This document shows, piece after piece, positions 30,800 to 64,000 of a stretch of 64,000 nt of DNA. Position 1 is the stretch's first letter. Each line of letters starts with the position of its first letter. Position numbers and translations under genes: made by a program. The notes beneath the pieces are model-generated. The model searched no databases and had not been told where the DNA came from. It worked only from the letters and a program-made list of their open reading frames with translations. The stretch is from positions 173,610-237,609 of IMG/VR virus record IMGVR_UViG_3300045972_000138. The stretch is one strand, 5' to 3'.

Positions 30800-31413
30800 A
30801 TGAACACCTACCGTCTAACAATTAAGACGGAAGATATTAAACGTCTAAAGGAAGATTTTGCCCAACTTACCGATAGTAAGTTATACACTATTGGTAACAC
30901 ATCGAAAGTAGCTTCGTTTGATGCTCAGGTAACAGACGAAGACATTTCCTATTTAAAACTACGATATAAATTTATTCTATTCTATGATCGATATGGTAGT
31001 AGTTTCTAGTAATTTCCAGGCACCGACACAAGAGTGGCCACCAACACGAACATTAAATGTCTTACCACATAATCAAGCTAAAATGTATACGGCATTAGTG
31101 GAGAGCTCTGCACAGTTCTACGAATTTAAGTACACTATACTAAATGATATAGTGGTTTTCACTTTCAGAGCTAACAACGAAGATTACGTTGCTCTTAAAC
31201 TAGCGTATGGAACATGATTCCGATAGTGAATTAGTAACTGCTTGCTTCCGAATGCGTAGCGAAGATGCTATAGATTTGCTGAATTACTGTGAATTAACCA
31301 ATATCTCCGTGTATTATGAGTTGTTTGGCACACAATCTGCTGTTGTGGCACTAAAAGCAACAGAGGAGGACATATCTTTCCTTAAGCTGCTATTCAGGAC
31401 GCGGCGATGGTAA
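30800..31413 (+). CDS. three small EDxxxLKL family paralogs (30800..31009, 30984..31217, 31207..31413)
   Basis: C-terminal TDEDISYLKLRY, NNEDYVALKLAY and TEEDISFLKLLF. Confidence 0.6.
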
Positions 31414-42195: not shown

Positions 42196-43323
42196 ATGTC
42201 CCAAATCCAAGTTAGTATCGTTCGTGGCGTCTATCGTGGGGAAGTTATCAGCGGAGTCTACCCGCTGGTTAAAGCTTACCAGGATGGTGCACGCGGTGGA
42301 TTCGTTACGATCAAGAACCCTGATCACAAGCCTGGCACCCCGATGGTGCAACGTGTGCAAGTGGAAGCCGATGGGTTCAAGCTGTTGGATGCAGCAGGTG
42401 CTGAACTTGAAGCACACATTGTGATTGAAGCAGGTGGTTCCACCGCAGTCACTGACTTCGAGTCTGCCTTTGCTGCGAACGAGAGCGAAGATGAAGCAAT
42501 GGAACGCATTGCAAACACCTTCTTGATGCTGGACAAGATCACTGATGCAGCAGCACGCGGCATTGTACGTGGACTCGTTGTTAGCGGCCCTCCTGGCATT
42601 GGCAAGAGCTTTGGTGTTGAAAAGCAACTCGAAGCCGCCAACATGTTCCGCAAGATGGATGGCAAAGACCCCAAGTACGAAGTTATCAGCGGTGGCGTAA
42701 GCAGCATTGGGCTCTATCAGAAGCTGTACCACAATCGCAGCCCTGAGAACGTGTTGGTGTTCGACGATTGCGATGGCGTACTGGAAGACAGCGAAATGCT
42801 CAACCTGCTTAAGGCAGCGTTGAACAGCGGCGACAAGCGTCGTATTTGCTGGAACAAGGAAAGTCGCGTGCTGTTGACGGATGACATTCCGAATGCATTC
42901 GACTTTGAGGGCTCTGTGTTGTTCTTGAGCAACAAAGACTTCGATAAAGAGATCGAGCGTGGAAGCCGCATCGCTGTACACTTGTCTGCGATTATGTCCC
43001 GCTGCCATTACTTGGATCTGGAGATTGGATCCACACGCGATAAGCTTTTGCGTATCAAACAAGTGGTGCGTGACGGTATGCTTACTAGTTTCGAGTTCAC
43101 ACAAGAACAAGAAGACGATATCGTGGCATTCGTTATCGACAACGCCGAGTACTTGCGTGAGATCAGCTTGCGTATGGTAAAGAAAGTTGCTGACTGGATG
43201 AAAGCTGATCCAGAAGGTTGGTACGAAATGGCCGAGTCCACTTGCTTGACCAAAGAAGCATACTTTAAACGTATGCTTGCAAAACAACAAAAGGCTATTC
43301 ATACGCCCTTGTTGACAGCGTAG
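42196..43323 (+). CDS. P-loop AAA-type ATPase
   Basis: Walker A VSGPPGIGKS, Walker B VLVFDDCD, SRCH sensor/Arg finger. Confidence 0.85.
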   Translation: MSQIQVSIVRGVYRGEVISGVYPLVKAYQDGARGGFVTIKNPDHKPGTPMVQRVQVEADGFKLLDAAGAELEAHIVIEAGGSTAVTDFESAFAANESEDEAMERIANTFLMLDKITDAAARGIVRGLVVSGPPGIGKSFGVEKQLEAANMFRKMDGKDPKYEVISGGVSSIGLYQKLYHNRSPENVLVFDDCDGVLEDSEMLNLLKAALNSGDKRRICWNKESRVLLTDDIPNAFDFEGSVLFLSNKDFDKEIERGSRIAVHLSAIMSRCHYLDLEIGSTRDKLLRIKQVVRDGMLTSFEFTQEQEDDIVAFVIDNAEYLREISLRMVKKVADWMKADPEGWYEMAESTCLTKEAYFKRMLAKQQKAIHTPLLTA

Positions 43324-43427
43324 TACTAAATAGACTGGGTATCACAAAATGCCCAGTTTGTTTTGTTTGATTTGACATTTGGTTAAATCAGTACTATAAT
43401 TCAAACACTTAAACAAAGGAGTCAGAA

Positions 43428-44861: not shown

Positions 44862-44880
44862 CTAAGATGAGCTTTAGGAG

Positions 44881-44902
44881 GCCCCGCAAGGGGCTTTCTT
44901 TT
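44881..44902 (+). terminator. intrinsic terminator
   Basis: GCCCC-GCAA-GGGGC followed by TTTCTTTT. Confidence 0.85.
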
Positions 44903-44981
44903 GGGCTATTCGTTTTTGAATACCTTGACACTCTAAATCTGATATGTTATACTTAGATCATAACTTATTAAGGAGCCACAG

Positions 44982-45227
44982 ATGGCATTCACAACTCTCA
45001 CCACAACCCAGAAGACATTCTTGGAATCTCACCTTCGTGGCACCGGCAAAGCATTGAGCTCTGCCCAGGCTCGCGAGACTTATGGCATTATGAACTTACG
45101 TGCTCGCATCTCTGAAATGCGTAGCGCAGGGCTTAATGTTCGCAAGGTTGTTAATACAAACGGTCGCAATGCATACACTATCGCTCGCCGCGATGTTGCA
45201 GGCGTACAAGGCAAGATCTTCGCATAA
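44982..45227 (+). CDS. helix-turn-helix protein
   Basis: LSSAQARETYGIMNLRARISEMRSAG. Confidence 0.7.
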   Translation: MAFTTLTTTQKTFLESHLRGTGKALSSAQARETYGIMNLRARISEMRSAGLNVRKVVNTNGRNAYTIARRDVAGVQGKIFA

Positions 45228-45252
45228 GCATTAGTCCTTTGTGTGTAAAGAA

Positions 45253-45631
45253 GCCACCTTAGGGTGGTTTTCTTTTGGTTGGATAAACAGGTTGCCCATT
45301 CATATCATATGTTGTATTATACATGTATTAACTACTTAAGGACTTGTATGAAAAATCTCTCTATTATCATTGCTTCGATGGTACTAGCATCAGCAGCGTT
45401 TGCAGCAGATTCTACCGCTACACAAACAATTGTGTTGGCAAAAGGGCTGACACTTACCTGCTCGAACGTCTCGTCTGTTTACGGTGTGGCCAATGGCGAT
45501 ACAACCGAGGCTCCTGCGGCAAAAGGTTCGCTGACTGTCAATTACAACGGCCGCCTCTATTTCTGCTCTACGGCTACGAAATAACCGATCTGCACATCCG
45601 CAAACCACCTTAGGGTGGTTTTCTTTTGGTT
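45253..45631 (+). repeat. duplicated terminator CCACCTTAGGGTGGTTTTCTTTTGGTT flanking 45348..45584
   Basis: Identical copies at about 45254-45280 and 45605-45631. Confidence 0.75.
45348..45584 (+). CDS. small secreted protein
   Basis: Signal peptide MKNLSIIIASMVLASAAFA; two Cys. Confidence 0.7.
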   Translation: MKNLSIIIASMVLASAAFAADSTATQTIVLAKGLTLTCSNVSSVYGVANGDTTEAPAAKGSLTVNYNGRLYFCSTATK

Positions 45632-45745
45632 AAAATATCTTTAAAAATCCGTAGACCTACAACTCTTCCTGCAGTATAATCAATACATGGGCAGCAGATA
45701 TAGCGGTCCAGAGTTAGTTTACTTTAATCAACTTTAGGAGTCTAT

Positions 45746-46204
45746 ATGACAAAAGGTATCCGCGCATTCGTTAACGACACGTTCAACAACACACTGTCCA
45801 AGCTGGGCGAACTGGGCAACATTGCCTTCCGTGCAGAAGTGATGAACCAGGCTATCATGGCCTTTGGTATCAACGTTGCATCCGCTGCAACGCATTACAA
45901 CCACAGCCTGAAGATGGCGCGTGCTGCAAACCCCGAAGCTGTTGCTACGCTGGGTCGTCCGGAAGACAAGAAGGGCGGACGCAAGCCCACGCTGGTGGAT
46001 GTGGTTAAGGCCAAGTCCGGCGAAGTGGTTGCAACTGGCGTCACCAAAGCTGCCGCTGAAGCAATGATTGCCAAAGCTGTTGCTGCCAAGAAGACCAAAC
46101 TGTCCATCAAGGTGGTGATCAACACCCCGGCCGAAGCTCCTGCAACCCCTGTGGAAGCTGCACTTGAATCCGGTGCACTGCACGCAGAAGCTGCATTGGC
46201 ATAA
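45746..46204 (+). CDS. ASAATHYN family putative DNA-binding protein
   Basis: MTKGIRAFVN...FRAEV...ASAATHYN...LGRPEDKKGGRKP. Confidence 0.75.
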   Translation: MTKGIRAFVNDTFNNTLSKLGELGNIAFRAEVMNQAIMAFGINVASAATHYNHSLKMARAANPEAVATLGRPEDKKGGRKPTLVDVVKAKSGEVVATGVTKAAAEAMIAKAVAAKKTKLSIKVVINTPAEAPATPVEAALESGALHAEAALA

Positions 46205-46634
46205 GCAGGGCCCGCAAGGGCCTTGTTTGCAGAGTGTTATAATGTAGCACTCTCCAAACAAGAAGGAGTTATCATGCCAGACTTTGATGATGTAGCCCTT
46301 GAAGATGCAATGTGTGCTGGATGTCAACCCGACAACGAATGGGAAGACGAAGATGATCAATGGGAAGACGATCTCACTATTGATTCCGGCGATCCTCTTG
46401 ACATCGAGTACGATCGTTAATTTTCCAAGATGGATTATTATTCCTAAGTAGGAATTTAAAATCCGAAACTTGGCCTGTCCTTTACACGTAACACGCATAT
46501 GACACTTACTACCCTCATCCTGCTCATTGCAGCGTGCGTCTTATTTTCAGAGGACCACCCTATACTTGGCATTTTGATGTTGTTCATCATCTTCCGATAG
46601 TATATAATATAAACATCAACAACAGGAGTTTACT

Positions 46635-47063
46635 ATGCTAATGAACGACGCACACACAGATTGGGACGTAGCTGACAACGATACACGTCCTGCCATTGCT
46701 ACACTGCACACAGGTGGCGGCGGATACTGGAGTAACATCAAACGTGATGTACACATTACTGAACTCACTGTTCCGTACATTAACGAAGAAGGCGACTTTG
46801 GTGAACTGCGTGTACATTTCAACACAGACAGCTGGCGCGTTGACAAAGTTGGATTGATATACACTGACAAGCAGTTTATGATAGAACTGCAAGCGTGGTT
46901 GTTGTCTATGGGACTTGCTGGATTAGATGTTGAATACAGCGAGCAAGGTATGCAGGGCGACAACTATGTTTCGTGCGATGTTGAAGCAGAATTCCTGAAA
47001 ACCTGGAAAGTAGCACATCCGGAAGCCTACAAGGCCGCATACGACAACATTTGGGCAGACTAA
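46635..47063 (+). CDS. hypothetical protein
   Basis: Own promoter cassette; YSEQGMQGDNYVS motif. Confidence 0.75.
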   Translation: MLMNDAHTDWDVADNDTRPAIATLHTGGGGYWSNIKRDVHITELTVPYINEEGDFGELRVHFNTDSWRVDKVGLIYTDKQFMIELQAWLLSMGLAGLDVEYSEQGMQGDNYVSCDVEAEFLKTWKVAHPEAYKAAYDNIWAD

Positions 47064-47231
47064 GCGACAGCGAGGAAGGGGCTTAGGCCCTTTTCGTTTG
47101 GTCATTTGAACCTCGGTGGCATAGATCAAGGCGCCGGTCGGACTAGAGCGAGGTTGCATAAAGATCAAACAAAACGGTTGCACACCAATCAATTCCTGTT
47201 ATAATAAACACATCGCAACAAGGAGCACATT

Positions 47232-47546
47232 ATGCTACTTCAACTCACTCCGTTCCCCATCAAGATGTTTGCACACAATCCAGAATCCAAGATGCTCGTT
47301 GTTGAATTGAGCGACTTTGGTTTGCCTGTTGGTATGTTGCCCTTTGGTCAGCTCTACGATGATGCGTGCGACGAAGGCTTTGCAATATATAACCATCGTA
47401 CTGGCAGCACAACCTTTTGGCACACTGCTGCCGATGTGCGCGATGCAGACGGCGACCTGACTACATGGATCCTGCAACCCACAACCGAGTCCTGCCGCAA
47501 GCATCCGGGCGTGCAGAACTACACGATGCACATACTCAACGACTAG
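47232..47546 (+). CDS. hypothetical protein
   Basis: Own promoter cassette; YDDACDEG motif. Confidence 0.7.
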   Translation: MLLQLTPFPIKMFAHNPESKMLVVELSDFGLPVGMLPFGQLYDDACDEGFAIYNHRTGSTTFWHTAADVRDADGDLTTWILQPTTESCRKHPGVQNYTMHILND

Positions 47547-48073
47547 GAGCACACCATGTTCGACATTATCCTTATTCGCTGGGGCTGGTACAAGTATCGC
47601 AAGGAGTTGGGTTATCCCATCGGCCTGCGTCGTGCTATGTTCTCGCAGATGCCACGATTCGGATCTTTTTACGAAGGCGAGGCGGGTTGCCCGGCATCTG
47701 ACAAACGTGATTACGTGTTAGTTCGCAAATACGAAACGGAGAATCCATAATGGCTTATCATCTTACTGGTCACGGAGCCTACAAGAAGGCAATTCAACGC
47801 AGCCTGCTACCTGTCGAGGGTGGATTGCATTATACGGCAAGCACAGACATCACCTCGGAGGACGCACTCGGATCGCCGGTCAACATACAGCGAGGCACAG
47901 GTTACAAGATAACTGGTACCAAAGACGGCAACGGCTACGTGGTGACCATCCTCGATGGATCCAAAGCAACCTATTACTTAGAGGCAGAAGAAGGTTGTAA
48001 ACTTTGCTAAAGTGGTTGCACAAACGGTTTCTGGTGTTATAATAAACACATCAGCAACACAATAGGAACTTAA

Positions 48074-48940
48074 ATGCCTACTCCACAACAGCAAATTATC
48101 GACAAGTGCAAGGAAGTGTACGAAACGGCTACACTCCTGTACGGTGTTGATATGTCCCGTGTAACCATTCACTTTGATCTTAAAGGTCACAATGCTGGAA
48201 TGGCATGCCGCCGCGGTGCCCAATACTACATGCGCTTCAACCGCGACATGCTTACACGTGATGCATTCGATCATGTGCTCAACAACACTGTGCCGCACGA
48301 AATTGCACACATTGTCTGCTTCATGAAACCCCAATATGGTCGCAATCACGACAGCGGCTGGGAGCGTGTTTGCCGTGCATTGGGCGGAACGGGCGCTCGC
48401 GCACATACCGAGGAAGTAGTGTATGGAAAAGGCACTACATATGAATATGTCACAAGCACTGGAAAGACTGTACGTGTTGGTGATCGTCATCACAAAGTTA
48501 TCCAAGCTGGCCGTTCACTTACTTGGAAACGTGGTTTGGGCACTGTTACAAACGCATGCCAATACAGCATTGTTGGTGTCCAAGGGCGCACACTTGCAAA
48601 CCCGCGTACTATTGTACCAACTGTACCTGCAGCCACTCCGGCATATGTTCCGGCATACCCATTTGGGGTTATTGGAACACAACTGCAACCAAAGGTACCG
48701 CACACAGTGGAAGTACCGAAACGTACACCACGCACTGTTGCCCCAACTGCCCCACACTTCCGCGAAGGTGCAAGCAAAGCAGCTATATCGCGTTCCATTA
48801 TGCTTGCAGGGCATACACGCGGTCAAACATATGAGCAAATCATTAGCGCAATGATGCTCGCGAATGGATATGATCGCCAACTTGCCCGTGCAACATACAA
48901 AGCAAACTTTGAAAAGGTTGGAGTGCCTGCTCCACAGTGA
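48074..48940 (+). CDS. SprT-like zinc metalloprotease
   Basis: FDLKGHNAG, TVPHEIAH and HDSGW. Confidence 0.85.
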   Translation: MPTPQQQIIDKCKEVYETATLLYGVDMSRVTIHFDLKGHNAGMACRRGAQYYMRFNRDMLTRDAFDHVLNNTVPHEIAHIVCFMKPQYGRNHDSGWERVCRALGGTGARAHTEEVVYGKGTTYEYVTSTGKTVRVGDRHHKVIQAGRSLTWKRGLGTVTNACQYSIVGVQGRTLANPRTIVPTVPAATPAYVPAYPFGVIGTQLQPKVPHTVEVPKRTPRTVAPTAPHFREGASKAAISRSIMLAGHTRGQTYEQIISAMMLANGYDRQLARATYKANFEKVGVPAPQ

Positions 48941-48952
48941 TAAATATGGGAT

Positions 48953-49486
48953 ATGAACTTAACTGAAATATCCCTACCCTCAACACAATACCTTACAGAA
49001 GCCTTCCGTAGCAATACAGAGGGCTTCTCTCTTGACGATCTTCTACTCATAGCACACACCTTCTTGTCTGAGGCAAAGAACAATAAGTCTCGCTCTGTGC
49101 CCATCGGCACCTTGAACAACGCTACCGAGGGCGTAGTCTTTGTAGAAGCATCCTGCTATGCATCTATGACTGCCCCTAAGATACAGCACTTGCCTAAGCT
49201 ACAAGCTAAAGTAGATGAGTTTAAAGCTAGTAAAAAGGCGAACAAAATGCAGCCATACGGTCCTAACGACAATGCGTTTGTGGGCGGTGGTCCTATCTCG
49301 AATATGATGCCGGGATTACGCCACGCGCACGTAACAAGGGACCTAAGCATTGTGTATGCCCTCTCGGGTGCCAATCCAACTGTCATTACATTGTACGGTA
49401 TCTTTAGCCACGCAGAGACAGGTACTGGAACACCGGGCAAACCCGATAGGCAGAAGAGTTTCGCAAAGTTTATAAAGAACCAATAA
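48953..49486 (+). CDS. RelE/YafQ-like RNase domain protein
   Basis: C-terminal GLRHAHVTRDLSIVY...LYGIFSHAE resembles YafQ; ATAAATA box at 48940. Confidence 0.5.
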   Translation: MNLTEISLPSTQYLTEAFRSNTEGFSLDDLLLIAHTFLSEAKNNKSRSVPIGTLNNATEGVVFVEASCYASMTAPKIQHLPKLQAKVDEFKASKKANKMQPYGPNDNAFVGGGPISNMMPGLRHAHVTRDLSIVYALSGANPTVITLYGIFSHAETGTGTPGKPDRQKSFAKFIKNQ

Positions 49487-49545
49487 ATCGGTTTACTTGC
49501 TTCGTGTTGATGCTATAATTAAAACATCAACAACAGGAGCTCTTA

Positions 49546-49854
49546 ATGCAAGCAAAGAAAGCAACACCACAACATTTTTCACTTAACACTGTAGCAGGCC
49601 GCGTTGCTTTGCTTACAGGCATTGTGGAGGGGGTTGTACTGCAAAAAGAAATTATGCACGCAGTAATTCAAGACACTGAAAAGCGCCCGTACCGCAAGCC
49701 TGTCGTTGCATACGGCAAACGTTACCCGAGTGTTACAGCAGCAGCATTGGCCAATTCGGGTGCAGTGGGGCGCAAAGCAGTAAACGCAATGCAGAAGAAC
49801 ATTGCACGCTGGTGCAACGAAGACTGCCACGTGGGCTTCTACTGGTCCGAATAA
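49546..49854 (+). CDS. hypothetical protein (NUMOD1-like segment)
   Basis: YGKRYPSVTAAA. Confidence 0.6.
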   Translation: MQAKKATPQHFSLNTVAGRVALLTGIVEGVVLQKEIMHAVIQDTEKRPYRKPVVAYGKRYPSVTAAALANSGAVGRKAVNAMQKNIARWCNEDCHVGFYWSE

Positions 49855-50907
49855 CATAAACGAAAAGGGGTTGACAGCCCCTTTTTTCTTTTGTATAATA
49901 CATTATGGCACAAATCACTATTATGGATCACGTTGTATTCCCCGATGGAAGTACCAACGAAGTCCATGCGACTATCACACACAGTGGTTGCAACATCGAA
50001 TACAGCGGGGCATTAACATCTGTCTCGTGGGAACAAATGGCAGATGTAGAGCAGCTTAGTGAGTTGTTTGGTTCACAGACTGTCCGCGTGTTTAAGGTTA
50101 TAGTACAGCTCTTGGGCAGGATCTACAGCGGCAAGGATGCATACAAACTTGTAGTCTGATTTGCGTGCCTAGATTTCAAGGTCAGATTTATGTTTCTAAA
50201 TCGGATTTTTAAACAAGGATCTGGCACAGGTTTCGTGCCTAAAGACTCAAAGGCACCTGAGCAGGCAGACCGAGGCACGTATACAATGGACAACCACACA
50301 CTAATCATTACACCGGAACAGAAGCGACTAATCATAAAAGCTCTGGAAAAGTTCTCGCAATTGCAGCTCGGGCAGACTAGTCTAGAGCAGCGAGAAGCAA
50401 AGAAGCTGGAGCAGTTGCTGGCACGTCATAAAGATAGTATAGTTGTAGACGCGGTAAATAGCGATACGCGCTAGTATATAATTAACTCTTGCCGGGTACG
50501 CAAGGGATCACTACAACCGCAACATTATACACCCACTGTATACGACGATACTGCTTTGAAGATAGCAGAGGGTCACTACGTTGTGGGGAGTAGCAGCAAA
50601 CTAATATGCGTAAGGATTTGGGTAAGACCCATTGGCTTCTATTAGCATTGCTTTTCTTATCTGGATATACTGTAACGCAATGCATCGCGTTGTCCCTATC
50701 CTAGATTTTCATCCTTGGATTTCATTTTCTGCTCTTAAATCAATTTCCCTGATTTAAGACGGTATCCTCGCTCCCAATTTTGAGAATGCACTTTGATTGA
50801 GCGAGGATTTCGCAGACTGCCCACCTCGGTATCGATCTGACCCAGTTGTCATTGAATCGAGCGAGGAGAGCACGCAGTAATAGGAGCATCGTTGCCCCTA
50901 TTATGCA

Positions 50908-51324
50908 TTAGACCCAGTAAAGCTTTGCCTTCTTTGCAGAAGCCGCCTTGCGGACCAGTGCAGTTGCAGCATCAAACGACAGCTTCTCGGCAACAAGTGC
51001 CCCAGTGCTCTTGACGAACACAGAGAACTCAGTTTGCTCAAGCACAACAGCCGCTTCGGGTGCAATGCGAATCTTGGGCTTGCGTCCGCCCTTCTTGTCT
51101 TCTGCACGCCCCAGACCTTCGAGGAGCGGTGCAAGTTCTGCAACCTTCTTAGCCTCTTTGAAAGCGTGATTGTAGTGGGTTGCAGCAGAGGCAAGCGTAA
51201 TGCCGTAGTCGTCCATTGCGAATGCAATAACTTCTGCACGGAAGCGCGTGTTGCCCAGTTCCGCACGCTGGGGAAGCAAGTCTACGAACTTGCGGTTAAC
51301 TGCGGGGCGAATTCCTTTGTCCAT
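50908..51324 (-). CDS. ASAATHYN family putative DNA-binding protein
   Basis: MDKGIRPAVN...FRAEV...LASAATHYN...GLGRAEDKKGGRKP. Confidence 0.75.
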   Translation of the reverse strand: MDKGIRPAVNRKFVDLLPQRAELGNTRFRAEVIAFAMDDYGITLASAATHYNHAFKEAKKVAELAPLLEGLGRAEDKKGGRKPKIRIAPEAAVVLEQTEFSVFVKSTGALVAEKLSFDAATALVRKAASAKKAKLYWV

Positions 51325-51495
51325 CTTAAACTCCTGTTGCGTTGTTGATGTATGTATTATGCATCCAAAGGAAGCTTCCGTCAACAACTATTTTCCACTT
51401 TACATATCTTTACAGAACATTAGTCTCGCTCTGTGCCCATCGGCGTCTTGATCGACTCGTCCGAGGCTAAATATTCCATCCAATGGAGATATATT

Positions 51496-52239
51496 ATGAC
51501 AAAGACCTACAATGTAGTTAAGAGTGCACCAGACGCAAGGGACTATCAGTTCTCGCAGAAGGTATCGATACCAAAGAGCGTGCCCAGCGCGGTGGACTTG
51601 CGTCCGCATATGCCTACCGTTGTTGATCAGGGTAACCTAGGCAGTTGCACCGCGAATGCTATTGTAGCAGCATTTCAATACGATCTTACCAAACAAAAAT
51701 TAAACATATTCACAGGATCCCGCCTGTTTGTGTACTATAATGAACGTGTAATGGAAGGAAGTGTAGGACAGGATAGCGGTGCAATGATTCGTGACGGGAT
51801 TAAGTCCCTTAACACGTATGGCGTATGCAGCGAGCCAACGTGGCCTTATATCATAGCTAAGTTCGCAGTTAAACCGTCTACAGCAGCTTACACGCAGGCA
51901 AAGCTAAACAGAGCACTAACCTATTACAGCGTTGCGAGCAATCCTACTGCAATCAAAACAGCACTTGCCGCGGGCTTCCCAGTAGTGATCGGCATCGAAG
52001 TCTACGAGAGCTTTGAAAGCGATGCTGTAGCAGTAAGCGGTGTTGTTCCTATGCCTGGTCCCTCGGAGCAGTTACTCGGTGGTCATGCAGTCCTAGTGGT
52101 AGGCTACAATGATGTATTAAAACAATTCATTGTACGCAATAGTTGGGGCACTGGTTGGGGCAAAAGCGGATACTTCTTCTTGCCTTATGCATACACATCG
52201 CTAATGAGCGATTGCTGGGTAGTCTCCTCGGTGAACTAG
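51496..52239 (+). CDS. C1A papain-family cysteine peptidase
   Basis: DQGNLGSCTANA, GGHAVLVVGY and RNSWG catalytic motifs; GGAG SD. Confidence 0.92.
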   Translation: MTKTYNVVKSAPDARDYQFSQKVSIPKSVPSAVDLRPHMPTVVDQGNLGSCTANAIVAAFQYDLTKQKLNIFTGSRLFVYYNERVMEGSVGQDSGAMIRDGIKSLNTYGVCSEPTWPYIIAKFAVKPSTAAYTQAKLNRALTYYSVASNPTAIKTALAAGFPVVIGIEVYESFESDAVAVSGVVPMPGPSEQLLGGHAVLVVGYNDVLKQFIVRNSWGTGWGKSGYFFLPYAYTSLMSDCWVVSSVN

Positions 52240-52865
52240 ATCAAGACGCCGGGCGCCCTATAGCGAGGTCTATGTTGTTGCGAAAAAACAACTAGACCTT
52301 TTTCTTTGACCTGTTATAATTGATACATCAACAACAGGAGAACTATATGGCAACAGCACTTCAAGCATCAGTAGTTTCTAAACTCAACAAGCGCCAACAA
52401 ACCTCACTCCGCACCCTTCAGAACAAGGTAGAGAGCGGCCGAGGCTACGTATCTACCATTGCTGTAAGCGACGCACAAATGCGTGCATTGCAAGCAGCGT
52501 TTGATGCAGCGAAAGCCTCGGGGCACACTCTGCCACCCGAAGTTGCAATTGCTGCGGCTAAGTTGGGATTGAAATAAAATGGTAGCACAGCTTGGAAGCT
52601 GTGCTATAATAAAGCATCACAACAGGAGTTTACTATGCTCACAGCTCAAGAAACAAATAAGCTACGTCTTATTAAAGATATGGCTACCCGTGGTTTGGCG
52701 AATCAAGTATCGCGTGAAGACAAACAATGGGTTCTGGACATAGCAGCACGGGAAGGATCCTCAGTCCCCGCCCCTGCAGCAGCGATGGCGTTGCGTGAGG
52801 GTTACAACATTAGCCATCTCACAAACATCAGCAAGCAAACGGTTGCAGTATAACAGGAGTATATC

Positions 52866-53069
52866 ATGGCATTTGATGTAATTCAACTGTGCCGCAACGC
52901 CGGCAATGATTTGAAAGCTGACCTCGGTGGTGCGCCACTTGAAGACAGTATGGCATACGAGGTTGCAGGCTGCTTGCTGGATGATGCCGATATCCTCAAG
53001 GCTGCTAAGGCCAAGTGGCCGGGCAAGTCCCGCCAGATCCTGCAAGAGATCATGGCAGACTACATTTAA
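52866..53069 (+). CDS. hypothetical protein
   Basis: AGGAG SD. Confidence 0.65.
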   Translation: MAFDVIQLCRNAGNDLKADLGGAPLEDSMAYEVAGCLLDDADILKAAKAKWPGKSRQILQEIMADYI

Positions 53070-53372
53070 AGATAGACAGTGTGTTTCTTTGTGTTATAAT
53101 TGATATATCAACAACAGGAGCGCACACTATGCAAATTAATGGAAACAAAATTATTTACGCCACCCATGTTGTGGTGTGCGACCCCTCGTGTGCCAGCCCA
53201 GAGTACATGAAGATTATGGCAGAGCTTCTTGAGGATGCAAATGCACCTACTATGCGTGAACACGCACGGACTCTGCGCTATCACAATAATGATGGCACGT
53301 GGGGGATTAAACAGCACAAAGGCTATCAACCCTGTGCTATAATGTCTGCATAGCAACACAAAGGAGCACACT

Positions 53373-53711
53373 ATGCAAACAGTTCACGCTTACATCCGCT
53401 TAACCCACAAATACCGTGATGGTTGGAGTCACTTGGACAGTGACGAGTTTTTGACATCAGTACGCCTCACTCCGCCTAAGATGGTTCGCGAAGGCGAAGG
53501 GTACGACGACGGTGGCAAGTATGTGCAGTACCTGCGTGTTCCCCGTAATGTTAATCCTGGGCAGCTTGGACAAGCGTTGCGCGATACTATCGGGGGCAGC
53601 GACTGCCGACACGAGCACGACTGCTGCGGCTGCGCTACACGTTATGTTCGCACTAAGCTAGTTGCACCACGCAAGCTCAAAGTAACGACAAGCGTTACCT
53701 ACAACTATTAA
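53373..53711 (+). CDS. hypothetical protein
   Basis: CRHEHDCCGC motif; own promoter cassette. Confidence 0.7.
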   Translation: MQTVHAYIRLTHKYRDGWSHLDSDEFLTSVRLTPPKMVREGEGYDDGGKYVQYLRVPRNVNPGQLGQALRDTIGGSDCRHEHDCCGCATRYVRTKLVAPRKLKVTTSVTYNY

Positions 53712-54333
53712 GTTAGTTGCTACTAACAGGGGACTTCGGTCCCTTTTGTTTTGGCCGCTGTGTTCGTGCTCTATGCGATCAAGGTAGCACTGCTTAAGAG
53801 CGAGGATCGCCACAATCGGTATATAGATCAACAGAGTCTCGCTAAGGTACAGATACTGGGCTTAGGTCTATACCTAAGGTGCGAGGTCGGCCTAGACTTC
53901 TAAGCCTGATTTAGATTTTTAAAAATCAGAGTTAAACTCAGAAATCTAATTCTCGCACCTAAACAAGAATCTTAAACAAGAACCCTGCCTATAGGCCACG
54001 ATGCTTGCTAAGGACTACACGCAGGTTATTGTACAGAACTAGTGGCACAAAATAGCCTAAAAAGCGTATTAAAACACGCCTACAAGCTTTAGTAGAGCAC
54101 TGGGCAATACTTTAACACGACAGCACGTAATCAATGTGTTGCCTGTTCGTTACTCTCGCTAACGATTGCAAAAGAACCGGTAACAGCAGCAGCAGTCGTA
54201 CCGAGGTTGTGGCCTATAAGATTAGAACCTTAGATCGTTTAGACAAAGTCTCGCTCTGTGCCCATCGGCGTCTTGATCGACTCGTCCGAGGCTACAGATG
54301 ACTACATCTTAGACAGGTGATTGCAGCGGAGAC

Positions 54334-57565: not shown

Positions 57566-57895
57566 ATGCTACGTATCATTCTATTAACTATCTTACTAAC
57601 TGGTTGTGCCACTAAGTTTGAAAAAGGTTCAGCCGGAATGGTGTATTGGCATAAGCTGGATTCTCAAGACGAAATTGTAGAAGCATGTTTACCTCCGCAT
57701 ACTAGGGGTTCGATTGTATTCAATATTCGTGGATGCTATGTGTTCAATGATAATGTTTGCCATATATACGCACAGGATGATATTAACAGTATGAAGTATT
57801 TAGGGCACGAACTCAAACACTGTTTTGATGGTCACTTTCATAATGCACGCGGGCAATGGTATAAGCTTGATAAGAATGGTAATATCATAGATTAA
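57566..57895 (+). CDS. small HExxH lipoprotein, paralog of 41341..41670
   Basis: LTGC lipobox; CHIYA...LGHELKHCFDGHFH; TATAAATA box. Confidence 0.7.
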   Translation: MLRIILLTILLTGCATKFEKGSAGMVYWHKLDSQDEIVEACLPPHTRGSIVFNIRGCYVFNDNVCHIYAQDDINSMKYLGHELKHCFDGHFHNARGQWYKLDKNGNIID

Positions 57896-58001: not shown

Positions 58002-58455
58002 ATGGTACTATATATGTTCCTTCCTACAATAAGGCCAGATTCAAGTAAGGAACTTATAAAACGTGTCCGTACAGCCAAAGTATGGCTAATAGAGCATAAG
58101 GTACTAGCAAGTGGAAGTTGTGTTATGTTCAATAATACCGAAGATTACCTATTCTTTAAACTTCAATTCAGCGACTTGCTACAGGACATATACAATGACA
58201 ATTAAGATAAATGTAAACAATTCATATATACAGCACGCCTACTCTGCTGCATACAATGCTTTATACGAGCCGGCTCAACGTGAATATGATTTCTTTAATA
58301 ATAGAGAACTTCATGATTACTGGATGGTACGTACTAAGGAATTGCTATGTGCTCAAAACAAATTCAAGATTATATCAGAGCGTAGTGGTTACCCTACTGA
58401 GATAGAGTTTGAGGATGAGAGCGATCTAATTGTGTTCAAATTGAAGTATAGATAA
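58002..58455 (+). CDS. two EDxxxFKL family paralogs (58002..58205, 58195..58455)
   Basis: FNNTEDYLFFKLQF and FEDESDLIVFKLKY. Confidence 0.7.
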
Positions 58456-58466
58456 ATATAGCAATT

Positions 58467-59696
58467 ATGTTACTATACGAACTCATATCCGAAGCTAGGC
58501 GTAACCCTGGGCAAAATGTTAAAGCTGAAGGGCACGAAGCGGCTGTTAATTTTCTAAAGAGTAAAGGCAAGGAATTACGATACTACGGGGTTAGTATGAC
58601 AGATATTCCTAAGCTAGGGATTAACCCCGGATCTAGGTATAACACTCCTGTAGGTATTTACTATTACCCTGCTGAATACTATGTAAGAAAGAAGAGTAAG
58701 GGTAAAGAATTAGAGTTTAAGGATGATGCACCTTATATACAGGTTTTTAAGATTAAGGCTAACACTATAGAACTTATCGATGAAGTAAACCACGATACGT
58801 ATGGTGGATACGTTAAGTTACTATATAAGAATGTTGGGCAGATTGCGAAGTATATTAATAAGTCGGAAAAAGAAACTTATAGCTTACTTAATAAACTAAC
58901 AATGGAAGCACCGCAAGAAGCTAAGGTTAATTCCTATGGTGGATGTCTATGGTATATACTTTACTCCTTGGGATTCTATGCTGGTAGGGATAAGCGCGAT
59001 AATGCTCCACCACGTAGTTCTGTTGTGTGGAATGCACTTATAAGAATGTTAGGATTAGATGGGATTGAGGATAACGGTGCGGGTATTATACACGAGAATG
59101 AACCTTACCAGGGTGTTATTGTAAATCCTAGAGGTGTGGAGCACGTTAATACATTTAAGAATGTAGGTAAGAAGGATGATACAACTAGCCTTAGATTTAC
59201 TAAGTGGGCTAATGCACCTATTAACGAATTTTCTATAGGTAACTTAGCGGATGATGTAGACGAGTGGGATATGCAATATAGTGATAAGCATAGGAAAGAA
59301 TGTAAGGCGATTATGACTAAGGTACTTACTGTATTACGTAACTCTCCTTCTACTTATTTAAGTTTGGGCCAGCGAAAAATATTCTCTTTGTTAAGGTTAA
59401 GTAATGACACTAATGTTAGGCAGGAATTGGCTGTAGGATATTTTGCTGCTAAGTTTCCTAGAATGAAGGCAGAGCTAGATGAAATAGTTACTGTATGGGA
59501 AGAAGAAAAGAATAGTGTTGAGTGGGCTGCGAAGCCAGAAAGTAGAAAGCAACGTGCATTTGCATTATGGGTACCTCCCGAGAAAGTAGCATACGCGCAT
59601 GAGTTTATGCGAAACTTAACTCCGTATAAATCCTCTAGTGCCGATGCTAAGAAGATGATTGATTATATCGAAGCTTCCTTAGCTAGGTTAAAGTAA
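58467..59696 (+). CDS. hypothetical protein (late, possibly virion-associated)
   Basis: 409 aa; ATAAATA box at 58452; MLLYELISEA start. Confidence 0.75.
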   Translation: MLLYELISEARRNPGQNVKAEGHEAAVNFLKSKGKELRYYGVSMTDIPKLGINPGSRYNTPVGIYYYPAEYYVRKKSKGKELEFKDDAPYIQVFKIKANTIELIDEVNHDTYGGYVKLLYKNVGQIAKYINKSEKETYSLLNKLTMEAPQEAKVNSYGGCLWYILYSLGFYAGRDKRDNAPPRSSVVWNALIRMLGLDGIEDNGAGIIHENEPYQGVIVNPRGVEHVNTFKNVGKKDDTTSLRFTKWANAPINEFSIGNLADDVDEWDMQYSDKHRKECKAIMTKVLTVLRNSPSTYLSLGQRKIFSLLRLSNDTNVRQELAVGYFAAKFPRMKAELDEIVTVWEEEKNSVEWAAKPESRKQRAFALWVPPEKVAYAHEFMRNLTPYKSSSADAKKMIDYIEASLARLK

Positions 59697-59832
59697 TTAC
59701 ATAACATTAAAGCAGCGGTTAATAGGTGTTTGAAATTTGCGCTTTTTCGGCGCGCTCGCTGCGTACTGACCTTAACCGCGCCTGAAGGTTTCCAATTGAC
59801 ATCATTAAATATTAGTTGTATAGTAGCCTAGT

Positions 59833-62800
59833 ATGAGTACATATCAAATATTTCAAGCATGGCAACACAAGGAATTATTCCTGAAAGCGGATGTCTGGCT
59901 AACTACTGTAGAAGACGGTGCGGAATGGAATTGGAAGCGTGGTAGGTCTACTATAAATGGAGTAGAGTATCCTGCTGCTGTAAATATAGAGCATGAAGAA
60001 GATTTGTTAGCATTCAAATTAAAGTTTGGTGAATTACTAAGATGAAAACTATACGTGTGGGCTCTTGGCCTTTTCCAACTGGTGTAGCCGCAGAGCGACA
60101 AGTGTGGCTATTAGAATTACCTAAAATGAAGAATGGAAGCCCTGCATATACATATGATAGTGGGTTAACATTTTCTAGAATAATATTTAAACGCAATGAA
60201 GATGCAACTGCTTTTAGGTTAAAGTTTGATCTATGAATATTATTATTGAACCACCTGTCAGCGATTATTATATTGTACAGGTTGATGTTACTGATGCTAT
60301 GTTAGCCGAGGATCCGTGGGGCAGAGAATGGTTTCCGGAAATAGAAGCGTGGTGCCACCAAACGCTCGGGCAACAAGATATGTGGGGCGAACCCGTAGTA
60401 ACTGGCTGGAAGCGTATGCGTAATAAGTTTTTCTTTGCAGATGAAGATATGCTTACTATGTTTAAGTTAGTGTGGGGTGGACCTGTAGAGTGAAAGCAAC
60501 AGGTGACACCGTTTGCCAAGTTACTGTCGGTGATGGTACTCTGTATGAGTTCGAATACTACACATATACTATGCAAGCCGAATACTTTGTTAGACGCGAT
60601 TGGGTTAAAGAGAATATAGGAATATTCGGTAAAGACTATTATCATCACCAAGGTACATGGTGGTTTAAAACAGAAGAAGATTTGTTAGCATTTATATTAA
60701 GGTTTGACTACGGAAGAAATAATGTATAATCTAAAGGTAATAAAGGATGGTCGGTCTAATAGCGATGGCGATGACCTCTGGGATCACTTTGTTGATTGGG
60801 TTGTGGATACACGCGGTGTACGGTATGTAGATACTGTATTATCTGAAATGAACGCAAAGAACATAAATGGTACTCCGTACATACAGTTTCGGTCCGAAGA
60901 GGATGCAATCGTATTTAAGTTGAGGTTTACATAATGTTCGAATTGGGTGCCGACTATGAATGGAATTAATTTGGGTAGGAAAGAACCTACCTGGTCATTT
61001 GTTAAGTTTCCCGACTTTGATCAAAGAGCAGAATGGAAAATATCAGGTGATACCTTAACTGATTACAGGGCATTTTTGGAAACAAATGCAGGACCAGAAA
61101 CCGATACCTGGTACTGGCTCCGGGGTGACAGATTCGCACAAGGCGTGTATATTAGTGATGCGTCTGTAGCAGTAATGTTTAAATTGAAATTTGATTTATC
61201 GTAATGTTGCAGCAGGACTTCGACGGATGGTATATAATTAACGGACCTAATTCTGTTAGGATATATAAATCGTTGGACTGGTGTAAGAAAAATCTTCCTG
61301 CTGATATATGGGAATATTCTTGGCATAATGGGGTCTTCTCATTTAAGAATAGTACAGATGCGTTAATGTTTAAACTTTTATTTGATGATGATTGTAGATC
61401 AAGGGATACTCAACAAAGTGTGGACTAACTGGCTCAGAAAAAAATTTACTGATCCATACATAGTAAGATCTAACAGCACGGATTATTCGCGGGTTGCAAG
61501 ACGTTCGCATATTGCACAGGAATTTGAAATGTGGTTATGGGCAGAAGGTGCAGCCGTTAGGCGTGCTAACAAGAAATGCACTTTAGAATTCTTTGATGAA
61601 GCAGATGCATTAGCCTTTGTTCTAAGAAACAGTTAATATGATTAAATCAGAATTGAAATTAACAGATAGTCGTAGTGTTGTGTATGTTGCAGCAACAGAG
61701 GTGCAACCCTGGATGGAAGAAACTTTTGGCAAGAAAGAAAACGGTAAGCGCAGGCAATGGTCTGTAAGGGCAGATTACCATAATCGTAAGATTATTATTA
61801 TGACACGTATCCCGGAACAGGCTGTAATAGTTAGATTGCGATGGGGTTCGATATGACATACCTATTAGACACTGGATTGCCTACTGCTACCGCTCCGTGG
61901 TTTGCTAACTTCATTAATATGTGTGCCGACGAATCGCAGTCTAAGGTTAATTTAGAAGATTCATTCAGAAGTAATTTAGCAAAGTATAACGGGCGCGGTA
62001 CCAAGAGTGCCTTTATCGAATTCGATACTCCAGAAGATGCAGTTGCTTTTGTGCTAAAATGGTCGTAACATGTTTATACTAGATGGCTTTAAGATATAAT
62101 AATTCAACTAGAATTTTTCCATACCATGTAAGTTACCCGCGGACTGGCAGCTGGTGGGCCAGCGATTGGAGAGATATGAGCAGTTGGTTAAATGCAACCA
62201 TCGGACCGTGCGTCTATGAATGGGAATATCTTAGCGAGTGCTTTTATTTTAAAACTAAAGAAGATTTATTAATATTCAAATTAAGATGGCTATAACTAAC
62301 GTAATGATACCAATGATTAAGCGAATAATGCCCGGGATACTTGCAAATCAAATTACCGGTATTCACCCCATGCCTGCATCCACAGGTAGCATATTTACTG
62401 TTAAGAATAACTGGTTGTTTAGGGATTATAATAAGAAATATTGGCCACACCAATTTATAGTTGAAAACGATAAACGTAGAGAAGTAGAGAAGTGGTGTTG
62501 GAATCATTTTAATGGCTGGCGTTGGCATAGTAGCCGTGGTAAGTTTGTATTTAAGAAGGCCGATGATGCTATGCTATTTAAAGTAAGATGGGAATGTAGG
62601 TCAGCATGAGCGAACTCATTACACGCCGCAGAGGGCATGAAGATTTTGAAAAGATGCTCAAAATCATCAAATTCTGCGAAAAGCAATTCGGTAAGACAAA
62701 TTGCTTTTACACGTGGGATATCAACTTTGCAGATGATACAGAAGACTACTGTGCATTCAAGTTCTGGGACAATTCAATGGCATCATACCTAAAGTTGATA

Positions 62801-63702
62801 TATCCCGAATTAATGACAAGAGAGCAATTTGATAATAGAATATACGATGAGAGTACTTAACAAAAAATACTGGCCTTACCAATTTGACTTACCTAAAGAA
62901 GTAGTGTATGTCACTGATGTTGACAAGCGCGAAGCGTGGTGTGAGGAAAATCTAAAAGCTAGTCAATGGAGATCGTTCGGGTGGAATATAAAAACTTTTG
63001 CATTTAAGAATGCAGAAGATGCAACTGTGTTTAAGTTAATGTTCAAATGAGCAATATCGTAACGGTTAGTTACACTGTATACGACGAATCACTGAAGTGG
63101 GCAAAAGAACACTGCCCGGGCTATATAACGAACGACTATCATATGATTAGTGAAGATGAACTCGATATATCATATATCGATTTCTTCTTTAGCTTAGATG
63201 CAGAAGAAGATATGACTGCCTTTAAATTAAAATGGGATAAATGACTGGGTACAGATTACGCATTGTTGGCGAAAGCACTGTTAGCAATATGCTACCGGTG
63301 TGGAAAAAATTTGTAGACACAATTAATCTTCCCACAAATCATACACAGTTTATAAGAGTACGAGATGAAAAGTTGTTATACGAATACAATGCTAAAATCG
63401 ACAAAGATAGAAAGCATTTACTCTTTAGATCAGAAACAGATGCAGTAGCATTCAAGTTAAGGCACTCATAAATGGATATGGTTAAAATTGATTTAACCGC
63501 ATATTGGAATAGAATATATGCAGGTACAAGTATTCTAAATACTGCGTCGTTTGCTGAATATAGAGTTATGAGAGAATGGTTAGCAAATACTAATACCCAA
63601 CACGAATTCAAATGGAACGACACAGGAATGTATTTGCCGGATTGCGTGTGGATAGATATAACTAGCGACACAGCAACAATATTTAAGTTGAAGTACCTAT
63701 GA
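59833..63702 (+). CDS. 17 tandem EDxxxFKL family paralogs
   Basis: Starts at 59833, 60042, 60233, 60490, 60722, 60947, 61204, 61382, 61638, 61853, 62083, 62286, 62606, 62847, 63047, 63241 and 63472; most end F-x-x-x-(E/D)-D-x-x-x-F-(K/R)-L-x-(F/W/Y), with a few degenerate copies. Confidence 0.8.
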
Positions 63703-64000
63703 GTATATCCGAAGATATGTTAGCTGACAAATTAAAGGGTCACTCCTTTAAGATGTCTCAATACCAATATGCAGAAGTGCGGAGTCATATTGATCCAGAG
63801 ATGATGTATATTGTTACAGAGTCAGTATATAACTTTATGAATGATCAACCAAGCGACACATATAAAATGTACTCATTCTTTAAAACAATAGTGCGTATTG
63901 TTATTAAAGTTATGTGTGAAAGAGAAAAGTGCGATATTGCACTTAACTCTGATAGAATAGAATCAATAGTGTGGAATAAGTATGAAGCAGTTTGCACTAA
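63699..64000 (+). CDS. hypothetical protein, 3' truncated
   Basis: ATGA-coupled; open to the window end; the SEDMLADKL start resembles the TEDxTF family. Confidence 0.6.
   Translation, partial: MSISEDMLADKLKGHSFKMSQYQYAEVRSHIDPEMMYIVTESVYNFMNDQPSDTYKMYSFFKTIVRIVIKVMCEREKCDIALNSDRIESIVWNKYEAVCT

What the first reader, a model, noticed from the sequence alone, without database searches (positions are those of the whole stretch)
58002..63702. Massive array of ~70-aa paralogs ending in EDxxxFKL
Seen: 17 consecutive, mostly overlapping genes (59833-63702), 2 more at 58002-58455 and 3 related at 30800-31413. The C-terminal F-x3-(E/D)D-x3-FKL-x-(F/W) strand-helix is retained while the N-terminal parts are highly divergent, often with W..W(C/L) motifs. 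Inference: a common docking or oligomerisation helix with hypervariable recognition surfaces, a library-like system possibly for anti-defence or host-range tuning.
Basis: partly seen in the sequence, partly recalled or inferred. Interest (0 to 1): 0.6.

Follow-up and report, generated by a model that had tools for sequence, protein, structure and literature searches.

The report
Phage array of small paralogous proteins
A large uncultured pond phage carries a tightly packed run of 19 genes for one small, undescribed, phage-only protein domain that also forms arrays in many other big phages, and one conserved copy carries a piece of the capsid protein that a known bacterial defence senses in phage T4.

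Summary
The array is real. A profile built only from proteins of other phages recovers all 19 genes at 58002-58455 and 59833-63702, plus 5 scattered copies elsewhere in the 237.6-kb record. It does not recover the three genes at 30800-31413.

The domain is about 55-60 residues and rich in Trp. Two AlphaFold models give a beta-alpha-beta-beta-alpha fold. It matches nothing in Pfam, PHROGs, NCBIfam, PADLOC or the PDB.

It has 638 relatives (50%-identity clusters). In 38 IMG/VR contigs it forms same-strand clusters of up to 23 copies. Three complete 344-369 kb genomes that carry it have T4-type capsid genes.

The copies are old and individually kept. Paralogs are at most 45% identical, orthologs are 45-86% identical, and dN/dS is 0.07-0.22. 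This does not fit a hypervariable library.

The genes overlap as in an operon and follow a conserved consensus sigma-70-type promoter, so early expression is likely.

One member (62286-62609) and its orthologs carry an N-terminal copy of the T4 gp23 residue 95-128 region, the Gol-like part of the capsid protein. Members in other phages carry other capsid-protein segments.

Best reading: early, diversified small binding proteins, some of which display capsid-protein peptides. Function is untested.

The parts
59796..59824 (+). Near-consensus sigma-70-type promoter (TTGACA, 17 nt, TATAGT). It ends 8 nt before the first ATG of the main array, so the mRNA would be leaderless or nearly so (inference).
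   Evidence: Best promoter-like site in 56-64 kb. The hexamers and spacer are identical in relative L005, while synonymous sites of the adjacent gene differ (pS 0.37). Genome-wide the pattern occurs 26 times on the + strand and 0 times on the - strand.
59833..60045 (+). Family member 1 of the main run (70 aa)
   Evidence: External HMM E 2e-8. Ortholog P0011/L005 is 86% identical, dN/dS 0.14.
60042..60236 (+). Member (64 aa)
   Evidence: External HMM E 6e-7. ATGA overlap.
60233..60493 (+). Member (86 aa)
   Evidence: External HMM E 7e-12. 48% identical to an L006 gene.
60472..60729 (+). Member (85 aa from a GTG; the true start may lie further in)
   Evidence: External HMM E 3e-12. Ortholog P0028 is 64% identical.
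60704..60934 (+). Member (76 aa)
   Evidence: External HMM E 3e-8.
60947..61204 (+). Member (85 aa)
   Evidence: External HMM E 3e-6.
61204..61428 (+). Member (74 aa, short C-terminal tail)
   Evidence: External HMM E 4e-13. P0099 is 45% identical.
61382..61636 (+). Member (84 aa)
   Evidence: External HMM E 1e-5.
61638..61856 (+). Member (72 aa, degenerate motif)
   Evidence: External HMM E 1e-6.
61841..62068 (+). Member (75 aa)
   Evidence: External HMM E 3e-6.
62083..62295 (+). Member (70 aa)
   Evidence: External HMM E 4e-15. Syntenic ortholog in L003.
62286..62609 (+). Fusion member (107 aa). The N-terminal 45 residues or so are homologous to T4 gp23 residues 95-128 (Gol-like capsid segment). 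The family domain follows at residues 48-105.
   Evidence: PHROG 138 major head protein E 3e-6. Pfam Gp23 30 bits, above its cut-off. Aligns to T4 gp23 chains and to capsid genes of PA5oct-like and other phages. AF2: domain pLDDT above 90, N-terminal peptide below 50. Orthologs are in A4.
62606..62860 (+). Member (84 aa) with a C-terminal extension after the motif
   Evidence: External HMM E 1e-3. Orthologs in L003/L004 are 66-69% identical, dN/dS 0.07.
62829..63050 (+). Member (73 aa from a TTG; orthologs start at residue 7)
   Evidence: External HMM E 7e-16. Orthologs are 68-77% identical, dN/dS 0.22. AF2 model: beta-alpha-beta-beta-alpha.
63047..63244 (+). Member (65 aa)
   Evidence: External HMM E 2e-7.
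63241..63471 (+). Member (76 aa)
   Evidence: External HMM E 2e-6.
63472..63702 (+). Last member of the run (76 aa)
   Evidence: External HMM E 6e-4.
58002..58205 (+). Member (67 aa), upstream part of the array
   Evidence: External HMM E 2e-5.
58111..58455 (+). Member. The 114 aa from the GTG overlap the previous gene by 95 nt. An internal ATG at 58195 would give 86 aa (inference).
   Evidence: External HMM E 6e-4. An ortholog in L005 directly precedes the conserved intergenic region.
58467..59696 (+). 409-aa ORF that splits the array. It is a gene-sized insertion relative to L005. Possibly an ADP-ribosyltransferase (lead only).
   Evidence: Absent in L005, with the flanks aligned. No Pfam or PHROG hit. 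ESM Atlas feature neighbours are ART-PolyVal/AcrIF11-like clusters at 0.90-0.91.
30800..31413 (+). Three small ORFs with a loose ED-x3-LKL ending. Family membership is not shown.
   Evidence: Not found by the external HMM. hhalign probability 15%.

Best explanation
The region is an operon-like array of anciently duplicated genes for a phage-specific, Trp-rich domain of about 55-60 residues with a beta-alpha-beta-beta-alpha fold.

Shown:
- The homology, the copy number and the shared predicted fold.
- Tight packing with overlapping stops and starts.
- A conserved consensus sigma-70-type promoter just upstream.
- Purifying selection on individual copies.
- Recurrence of such arrays in many large uncultured phages. 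The three complete genomes examined have T4-type capsid genes.
- A conserved subfamily whose N-terminus is a copy of a capsid-protein segment.

Inferred:
- The array is transcribed early by unmodified host RNA polymerase as one polycistronic, translationally coupled message.
- Each copy uses the same stable core to present a different surface or N-terminal peptide.
- Each copy therefore binds a different target, probably a host or host-defence protein. This is the usual role of small early accessory genes of T4-like phages.
- The fusion member displays a flexible capsid-derived (Gol-like) peptide on this core.
For: Family and fold.

No known family or solved relative. Only generic fold matches, with Z at most 6.5.

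Phage-only relatives:
- 638 clusters, almost all 55-110 aa.
- BFVD and ESM Atlas neighbours are all viral hypothetical proteins.

Arrays elsewhere:
- L001 has at least 15 in 3.4 kb.
- 38 IMG/VR contigs have clusters of up to 23.
- Complete 344-369 kb genomes carry 6-21 copies and a full Gp23 capsid gene.

Old, maintained paralogs.

Variable charge, pI 4.2-10.2.

Operon-like packing and promoter.

Two-domain tandem fusions exist (P0013, P0014, P0019, P0021, P0111).

Capsid-fragment fusions.
Against: - There are no expression data. No RNA run holds this phage, so 'early' rests only on promoter type.
- No binding partner is known. The only complex tested gave no answer.
- The host is unknown (pond metagenome).
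- The conserved D, K and R/K on the last helix could mean one common partner rather than many targets.
- The capsid-fragment fusions point to the phage's own capsid rather than to host targets.
- The fold class also includes RNA-binding and ligand-binding domains.
Confidence: 0.4

Rival explanations
1. Capsid-linked role. The domain works with the gp23-type capsid protein, in one of two ways. It may modulate assembly by capping interfaces with borrowed N-arm, E-loop or spine-helix segments. Or it may be cargo targeted into the prohead by capsid-derived N-terminal segments and delivered with the DNA.
For: - Members in different phages carry three different conserved capsid-protein segments: MCP residues 6-99, 154-178 and 187-216.
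- 8 of 13 unique non-capsid hits of a capsid HMM are family ORFs, although family ORFs are only 7.6% of small ORFs.
- One fusion (L022) includes the capsid propeptide region.
- All three complete genomes examined that carry the family have a Gp23-type capsid gene.
Against: - Most members (about 65-76 aa) have no room for any capsid-derived segment.
- Arrays lie far from the capsid gene. In G004 the array is at 5-14 kb and the capsid gene at 91 kb.
- The promoter is of the early type.
- G004 has 18 members and no such fusion at BLAST level.
- Matches to segments B and C are weak, E 0.01-0.5.
Confidence: 0.15
2. Counter-defence set. Members inhibit or decoy host immune sensors. The capsid-fragment fusions would act as early-made mimics of the most conserved capsid epitopes, which capsid-sensing abortive-infection systems such as Lit recognise.
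For: - The fusion peptide aligns with T4 gp23 residues 95-128. By my recollection of the primary papers this overlaps the 29-residue Gol region. The review only places Gol in the first quarter of gp23 and calls it the most conserved part, binding EF-Tu and activating Lit.
- The peptide is predicted to be flexible and exposed.
- It keeps invariant residues across distant fusions.
- A possible AcrIF11/ART-PolyVal-like enzyme is inserted in the array.
- Gene content of arrays differs between related phages.
Against: - No member resembles any known anti-defence protein, and no assay exists.
- A Gol-like peptide made early would be expected to trigger a Lit-type system rather than block it, unless it binds without activating.
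- Copies evolve under purifying selection, without the rapid change typical of arms-race genes.
- The EF-Tu co-fold gave no answer.
Confidence: 0.15
3. Small nucleic-acid-binding regulators. The split beta-alpha-beta core acts like an RRM, KH or ACT-type module that binds RNA, DNA or a small ligand to tune phage or host gene expression.
For: The nearest solved folds, at Z 4-6.5, include RRM, KH, ACT and ribosomal-protein domains. Some members are strongly basic, with pI 9.4-10.2.
Against: - The matches are at the level expected for any small alpha/beta fold (notes).
- Over half of the members are acidic. Net charge ranges from -9 to +10.
- No conserved basic patch exists beyond K and R/K on the last helix.
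Confidence: 0.1
4. Decaying or selfish duplicates, or mis-called ORFs, with no function for the phage.
For: None positive. Only the lack of any functional data.
Against: - All 19 frames are open, on one strand, and match an independent profile.
- dN/dS is 0.07-0.22.
- Orthologs are conserved in order in another phage.
Confidence: 0.03

Closest known systems
Lineage-specific expansions of small domains in jumbo phages, for example the roughly 35-copy zinc ribbon of Bacillus phage G (Iyer et al. 2021, PMC7824862)
   Same: Many paralogs of one tiny domain in one very large phage genome, with function unknown.
   Different: A different fold (no metal-binding Cys/His pattern), tight tandem operon-like arrays, and recurrence across many phages. 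This family is not named in that survey as far as my term search showed.
[quoted passage not shown]
   Same: Residues 7-40 of the 62286-62609 protein align with gp23 residues 95-128 and pass the Pfam Gp23 cut-off. Like Gol, the segment is a short linear peptide from the most conserved part of the capsid protein.
   Different: Here the segment sits on a 107-aa non-capsid protein fused to the array domain. Binding to EF-Tu and any effect on a Lit-type protease are untested. The exact Gol residue range (93-122) is from my memory of the primary papers, not from a paper I could read.
Clusters of small early accessory genes of T4-like phages, and amplified anti-defence loci (for example PMC13096335, seen)
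   Same: Small, overlapping, co-directional genes behind host-type promoters, with gene content varying between relatives.
   Different: Those clusters are mixtures of unrelated genes or recent amplifications. Here one ancient family fills the cluster, and no recent duplication is visible.
Split beta-alpha-beta (ferredoxin-like, RRM, ACT, HMA) small domains
   Same: The order of secondary-structure elements and the packing of two helices on one sheet. Z is 4-6.5 with rmsd 2-3.5 A over 52-71 residues.
   Different: The sheet has only three strands (beta-alpha-beta-beta-alpha). There is no sequence similarity and no conserved ligand or RNA-binding motif. The scores are in the range of chance resemblance.

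Membership tests
Any curated protein family (Pfam-A, PHROGs v4, NCBIfam, PADLOC) | Significant profile match of the array domain | tested here: not met
   No family for the 22 window proteins or for 47 relatives. PADLOC gave one stray hit at E 0.003 in 1 of 22 proteins.
Proteins with a solved structure | Sequence or clear fold match to a PDB chain | tested here: not met
   The profile against PDB sequences gave 0 hits. Foldseek found nothing at E <= 0.001. The best VIA-align Z was 6.5 and 6.0, below the level considered informative.
gp23-type major capsid protein, N-terminal (Gol-like) region; fusion member 62286-62609 only | Homology to the conserved N-terminal segment of gp23 | tested here: met
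   Pfam Gp23 30 bits against a cut-off of 24.4. PHROG 138 E 3e-6. Aligned to T4 gp23 residues 95-128. tblastn hits inside capsid genes. An HMM of capsid proteins from related phages gives E 7e-8.
gp23-type major capsid protein; fusion member only | Full HK97-type capsid fold of about 400-520 residues | tested here: not met
   Only profile positions 5-44 of 376 match. The protein is 107 aa, and the rest of it is the array domain.
Gol peptide (functional definition) | Binds EF-Tu domains II/III and licenses Lit cleavage of EF-Tu | tested here: inconclusive
   The co-fold of residues 1-50 with E. coli EF-Tu gave 'no answer'. It needs biochemistry.
Diversity-generating (hypervariable) library | A reverse transcriptase and template/variable repeat pair, or elevated dN/dS | tested here: not met
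   No RVT_1 in the record, which is 62% complete. The only repeats are the 29-34 nt motif-coding pieces at 71-91% identity. dN/dS is 0.07-0.22.
Lineage-specific expansion of a small domain in a jumbo phage | Many paralogs of one domain within one phage genome of 200 kb or more | tested here: met
   24 members in 237.6 kb by an independent HMM. There are 6-21 in complete 344-369 kb genomes.
Known anti-defence proteins | Homology to a characterised inhibitor, or demonstrated inhibition of a defence system | not testable with these tools
   No anti-defence library was at hand and no assay is possible. Family scans gave no named match.

The most novel reading that the evidence does not exclude
Large gp23-type phages use this small domain as a carrier that displays short, highly conserved pieces of their own major capsid protein. 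These pieces are the Gol-like N-terminal segment and, more weakly supported, an E-loop-type strand and a spine-helix-type segment. The proteins would be made early from a host-type promoter. They would act as mimics of capsid epitopes, either to blunt capsid-sensing abortive-infection systems of the Lit type or to control capsid assembly. The rest of the array would be further target-specific versions of the same carrier.
Probability: 0.2. Interest if true: 0.8.

Novelty: new member of a known kind. Interest (0 to 1): 0.6.

Why it matters
- The family is large: 638 clusters at 50% identity, in arrays of up to 23 genes. It takes up several kilobases in many of the biggest uncultured phages, yet it is absent from Pfam, PHROGs and NCBIfam and has no solved structure. 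Defining it removes a block of 'hypothetical' genes from jumbo-phage annotation.
- It offers a compact, apparently very evolvable scaffold for study.
- The conserved fusion with the Gol-like capsid segment gives a concrete experiment. [quoted passage not shown]

Tried and rejected
1. Cultured phages: megablast and tblastn against 50,697 phage records found no relative of the array or of a consensus-like member. The family is seen only in uncultured phages so far.
2. The search for related loci with the alignments failed because no stretch was conserved enough. Single proteins found nothing in IMG/VR. A degenerate DNA pattern for the motif did work.
3. Complex prediction, Gol-like peptide (residues 1-50) with E. 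coli EF-Tu: no answer, score 0.00. This is no evidence either way.
4. Position of arrays near the ends of 'DTR' genomes as a sign of first-injected early genes: rejected. The terminal repeats are 99 and 127 nt, that is, assembler overlaps of circular contigs.
5. The Hydra vulgaris 5271-aa hit (P0015): rejected. It consists of seven identical weak repeats of 7.9 bits each, whose scores add up.
6. Reads: the only holders are two pond-metagenome DNA runs, and no RNA run. Laying the contigs showed only the same phage at low depth in a second study.
7. A wider 'mimic of other large proteins' idea: BLAST of all small ORFs against all large ORFs of G004 and G000 found no family member carrying a piece of another large protein.
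8. Exact residue numbers of the Gol peptide could not be confirmed from the papers held.
9. Uniform acidic (DNA-mimic) or basic character: rejected.

Full report
**Where the window lies.** The window is the last 64 kb of a single 237,609-bp IMG/VR virus record. The record is linear and CheckV rates it 62% complete. The DNA comes from a pond metagenome. A second pond study holds the same phage at low depth, and no RNA run holds it. No cultured phage is close. The DNA ligase is about 42% identical to those of distant T4-like Pseudomonas phages. The record encodes a family-B DNA polymerase but no T4-type portal and no full capsid gene, so the structural module is probably in the missing part. The rest of the window holds tRNAs, a cell-wall hydrolase, an HD-domain protein, an I-TevI-like endonuclease, a YqeY-like protein and a papain-like protease. 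This is an accessory and replication region.

**Checking the observation.**
- From 59833 to 63702 there are 17 consecutive + strand ORFs of 64-107 aa, and two more lie at 58002-58455.
- A profile built from these genes finds them at E 1e-8 to 1e-17, but that test is circular.
- I therefore built a profile from 142 proteins of other phages only. It recovers all 19 at E <= 1e-3 among 1779 six-frame ORFs. It also finds five scattered genes elsewhere in the genome. All hits are on the + strand.
- The strict motif is found in 7 + strand ORFs and in no - strand ORF.
- The three genes at 30800-31413 are not found by this profile. hhalign gives only 15% probability. Their kinship is not shown.
- The 409-aa ORF that separates the two parts of the array is missing in a close relative (L005). 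There the ortholog of the 58111 gene is followed directly by the same intergenic sequence and the ortholog of the 59833 gene. The array is therefore one unit with an inserted gene.
- The run ends at 63702. The next ORF is not a member, although its first residues and DNA resemble the family's terminal motif.

**The domain.**
- Over 167 sequences, the conserved positions span the whole domain rather than only its end. They are an aromatic residue in strand 1, W-C in helix 1, a Gly after it, a Trp in strand 2, a Phe in strand 3, and D-A-x2-F-K-L-(R/K)-(W/F) in the last helix.
- Trp makes up 3.8-5.0% of residues, against 1.3% in large ORFs of the genome.
- AlphaFold2 models of two members that are 38% identical both give strand-helix-strand-strand-helix. 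The 62829 protein has mean pLDDT 74. The domain of the 62286 protein has pLDDT above 90.
- Neither Foldseek nor an exhaustive structural scan finds a convincing solved relative. Best Z is 6.5 and 6.0, among generic RRM, ACT and ferredoxin-like hits and designed proteins.
- Profile searches of PDB sequences, Pfam, PHROGs, NCBIfam and PADLOC find nothing.
- Predicted-structure libraries return only uncharacterised viral proteins.

**Distribution.**
- An exhaustive profile search of 1.84 billion representatives gives 638 clusters at E <= 0.001. Nearly all are 55-110 aa. A few are two-domain tandem fusions.
- One apparent animal hit is an artefact of seven weak identical repeats.
- Arrays recur widely. 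A 3.4-kb JGI contig has at least 15 members in a row. A 77-kb NCBI contig has 11.
- All 38 IMG/VR contigs found with a degenerate motif pattern carry at least one member, and 34 carry same-strand clusters of 2-23.
- Three complete genomes of 344-369 kb carry 6-21 copies (18 in G004 by my own profile). Each has a full Gp23-type capsid gene.

**Evolution.**
- In-genome paralogs are at most 25-45% identical over partial lengths, and the best paralog is usually not the neighbour.
- Several genes have orthologs at 45-86% identity over their whole length in other contigs.
- Where DNA is available, dN/dS is 0.07-0.22.
- A block of four genes (62083, 62286, 62606, 62829) is kept in order in L003, while the flanking members differ.
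- There is no reverse transcriptase in the record. The only DNA repeats are the 29-34 nt that encode the motif.
- The array is therefore ancient and its members are individually maintained, with some turnover of content. It is not a hypervariable library.

**Expression signals.**
- Junctions within the array are ATGA overlaps (six), longer overlaps, or gaps of at most 14 nt. This is the pattern of translationally coupled genes in one transcript.
- The single 136-nt gap before 59833 holds the best promoter-like site of the region: TTGACA, 17 nt, TATAGT.
- Hexamers and spacer are identical in L005, although synonymous sites nearby have diverged.
- Genome-wide the pattern TTGACA-N16-18-TAnAnT occurs 26 times on the + strand and never on the - strand. 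My own estimate of the chance expectation is about 1 per strand.
- By analogy with T4, whose early promoters have both host-type hexamers, I infer early transcription by host polymerase. This is inference only.

**The capsid-fragment fusions.**
- The 107-aa protein at 62286-62609 has the family domain at its C-terminus. Its N-terminal 40 residues match major head proteins: PHROG 138 at E 3e-6, Pfam Gp23 above cut-off, T4 gp23 residues 95-128, and capsid genes of PA5oct-like, phiAS5, SCTP-2 and XacN1 phages.
- The same architecture is found in P0016, P0041, P0089, P0130, P0162, P0163, L003, L006 (P0160), L017/L020, L022 and G005. Invariant Pro and Phe positions are kept across members that otherwise share about 32% identity.
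- An ESM Atlas cluster of 113 such proteins exists.
- The peptide is modelled as flexible (pLDDT below 50) next to a confident domain.
- According to a T4 review, a 29-residue 'Gol' region in the first quarter of gp23 is the most conserved part of the protein. It binds EF-Tu and thereby licenses the Lit protease.
- That Gol spans roughly residues 93-122 is my recollection of the primary papers, which I could not read.
- A profile of the capsid proteins of three related complete genomes also gives weaker matches in members from other phages. These match two other capsid segments: residues 154-178 in a G003 gene and L036, and residues 187-216 in a G005 gene and L024.
- Of 13 unique non-capsid hits of that profile, 8 are family ORFs, against a 7.6% share of small ORFs.
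- The window's own array holds only the Gol-like fusion. G004 holds none.
- A co-fold of the peptide with E. coli EF-Tu gave no answer.

**Interpretation.**
- The best-supported account is a family of early-made, diversified small binding proteins built on one stable core. This is what small early accessory genes of T4-like phages usually are.
- The fusions show that the core can carry a functional peptide. I give this reading 0.4.
- The fusions also support two narrower ideas. One is a role tied to the capsid protein itself (0.15). The other is counter-defence by mimicry of conserved capsid epitopes (0.15).
- A nucleic-acid-binding role (0.1) and non-function (0.03) are less likely, given the mixed charge and the purifying selection.
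No alternative genetic code was used.

Noticed in passing
window 62286-62609: The N-terminus of this array member is a copy of the conserved N-terminal (Gol-like) segment of gp23-type capsid proteins, aligning with T4 gp23 residues 95-128. The same fusion is conserved in many other phages. It is the only Gp23 match in the 237.6-kb record.
   Followed up: yes
G003:C1:110044-110436 (L055), G005:C1:60764-61048 (L054), L036:4131-4613, L024:791-1066: Family members in other phages carry N-terminal stretches that weakly match two further capsid-protein segments (MCP residues 154-178 and 187-216). L012 has small ORFs with capsid fragments but without the family domain.
   Followed up: partly
window 58467-59696: A 409-aa ORF is inserted cleanly into the array and is absent in relative L005. 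It has no Pfam or PHROG match. Its ESM Atlas feature neighbours are ART-PolyVal and AcrIF11-like ADP-ribosyltransferase clusters (score 0.90-0.91, a lead only).
   Followed up: partly
window 31757-33045: A second, unrelated run of six small paralogous ORFs (62-94 aa). They share an N-terminal EDDTF-x-KL motif and a later HHWT-x-EEY motif. The run lies directly downstream of the three ORFs at 30800-31413.
   Followed up: no
whole genome G000 (window examples 13438, 16331, 24205, 43372, 44925, 49871, 59796): There are 26 near-consensus TTGACA-N16-18-TAnAnT promoters, all on the + strand and none on the - strand. Some lie within a few bases of an ATG, which suggests leaderless or very short-leader mRNAs.
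   Followed up: partly
window 63699-63741: The ORF after the array is not a member. It begins with residues and DNA that resemble the family's terminal ED-x3-(F)KL motif (repeat family D1, 71% identity). This may be a scar of recombination between motif-coding repeats.
   Followed up: no
window 38000-54000: A block with 47-49% G+C, against 36-45% in the rest of the window. It holds unknown ORFs and a papain-family protease gene (51433-52239).
   Followed up: no
window 33047-35982 (- strand): Two large paralogous minus-strand ORFs (499 and 471 aa) with repetitive propeller-like sequence. One weakly matches a virion structural protein PHROG. They are the only long minus-strand genes in the window and coincide with negative GC skew.
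   Followed up: no
window 57566-57895: A 109-aa ORF with a lipoprotein-type signal sequence and an HExxH-like motif, just upstream of the array. It matches only an unknown-function PHROG.
   Followed up: no
P0015 (Hydra vulgaris XP_065643044.1): This 5271-aa animal protein ranked third in the big profile search. The reason is that seven identical weak repeats (7.9 bits each) add up. It is not a family member.
   Followed up: yes
G002 and G004 record ends (L045-L048): The 'direct terminal repeats' of these complete IMG/VR records are 127 and 99 nt. These are assembler k-mer overlaps of circular contigs, not biological terminal repeats.
   Followed up: yes
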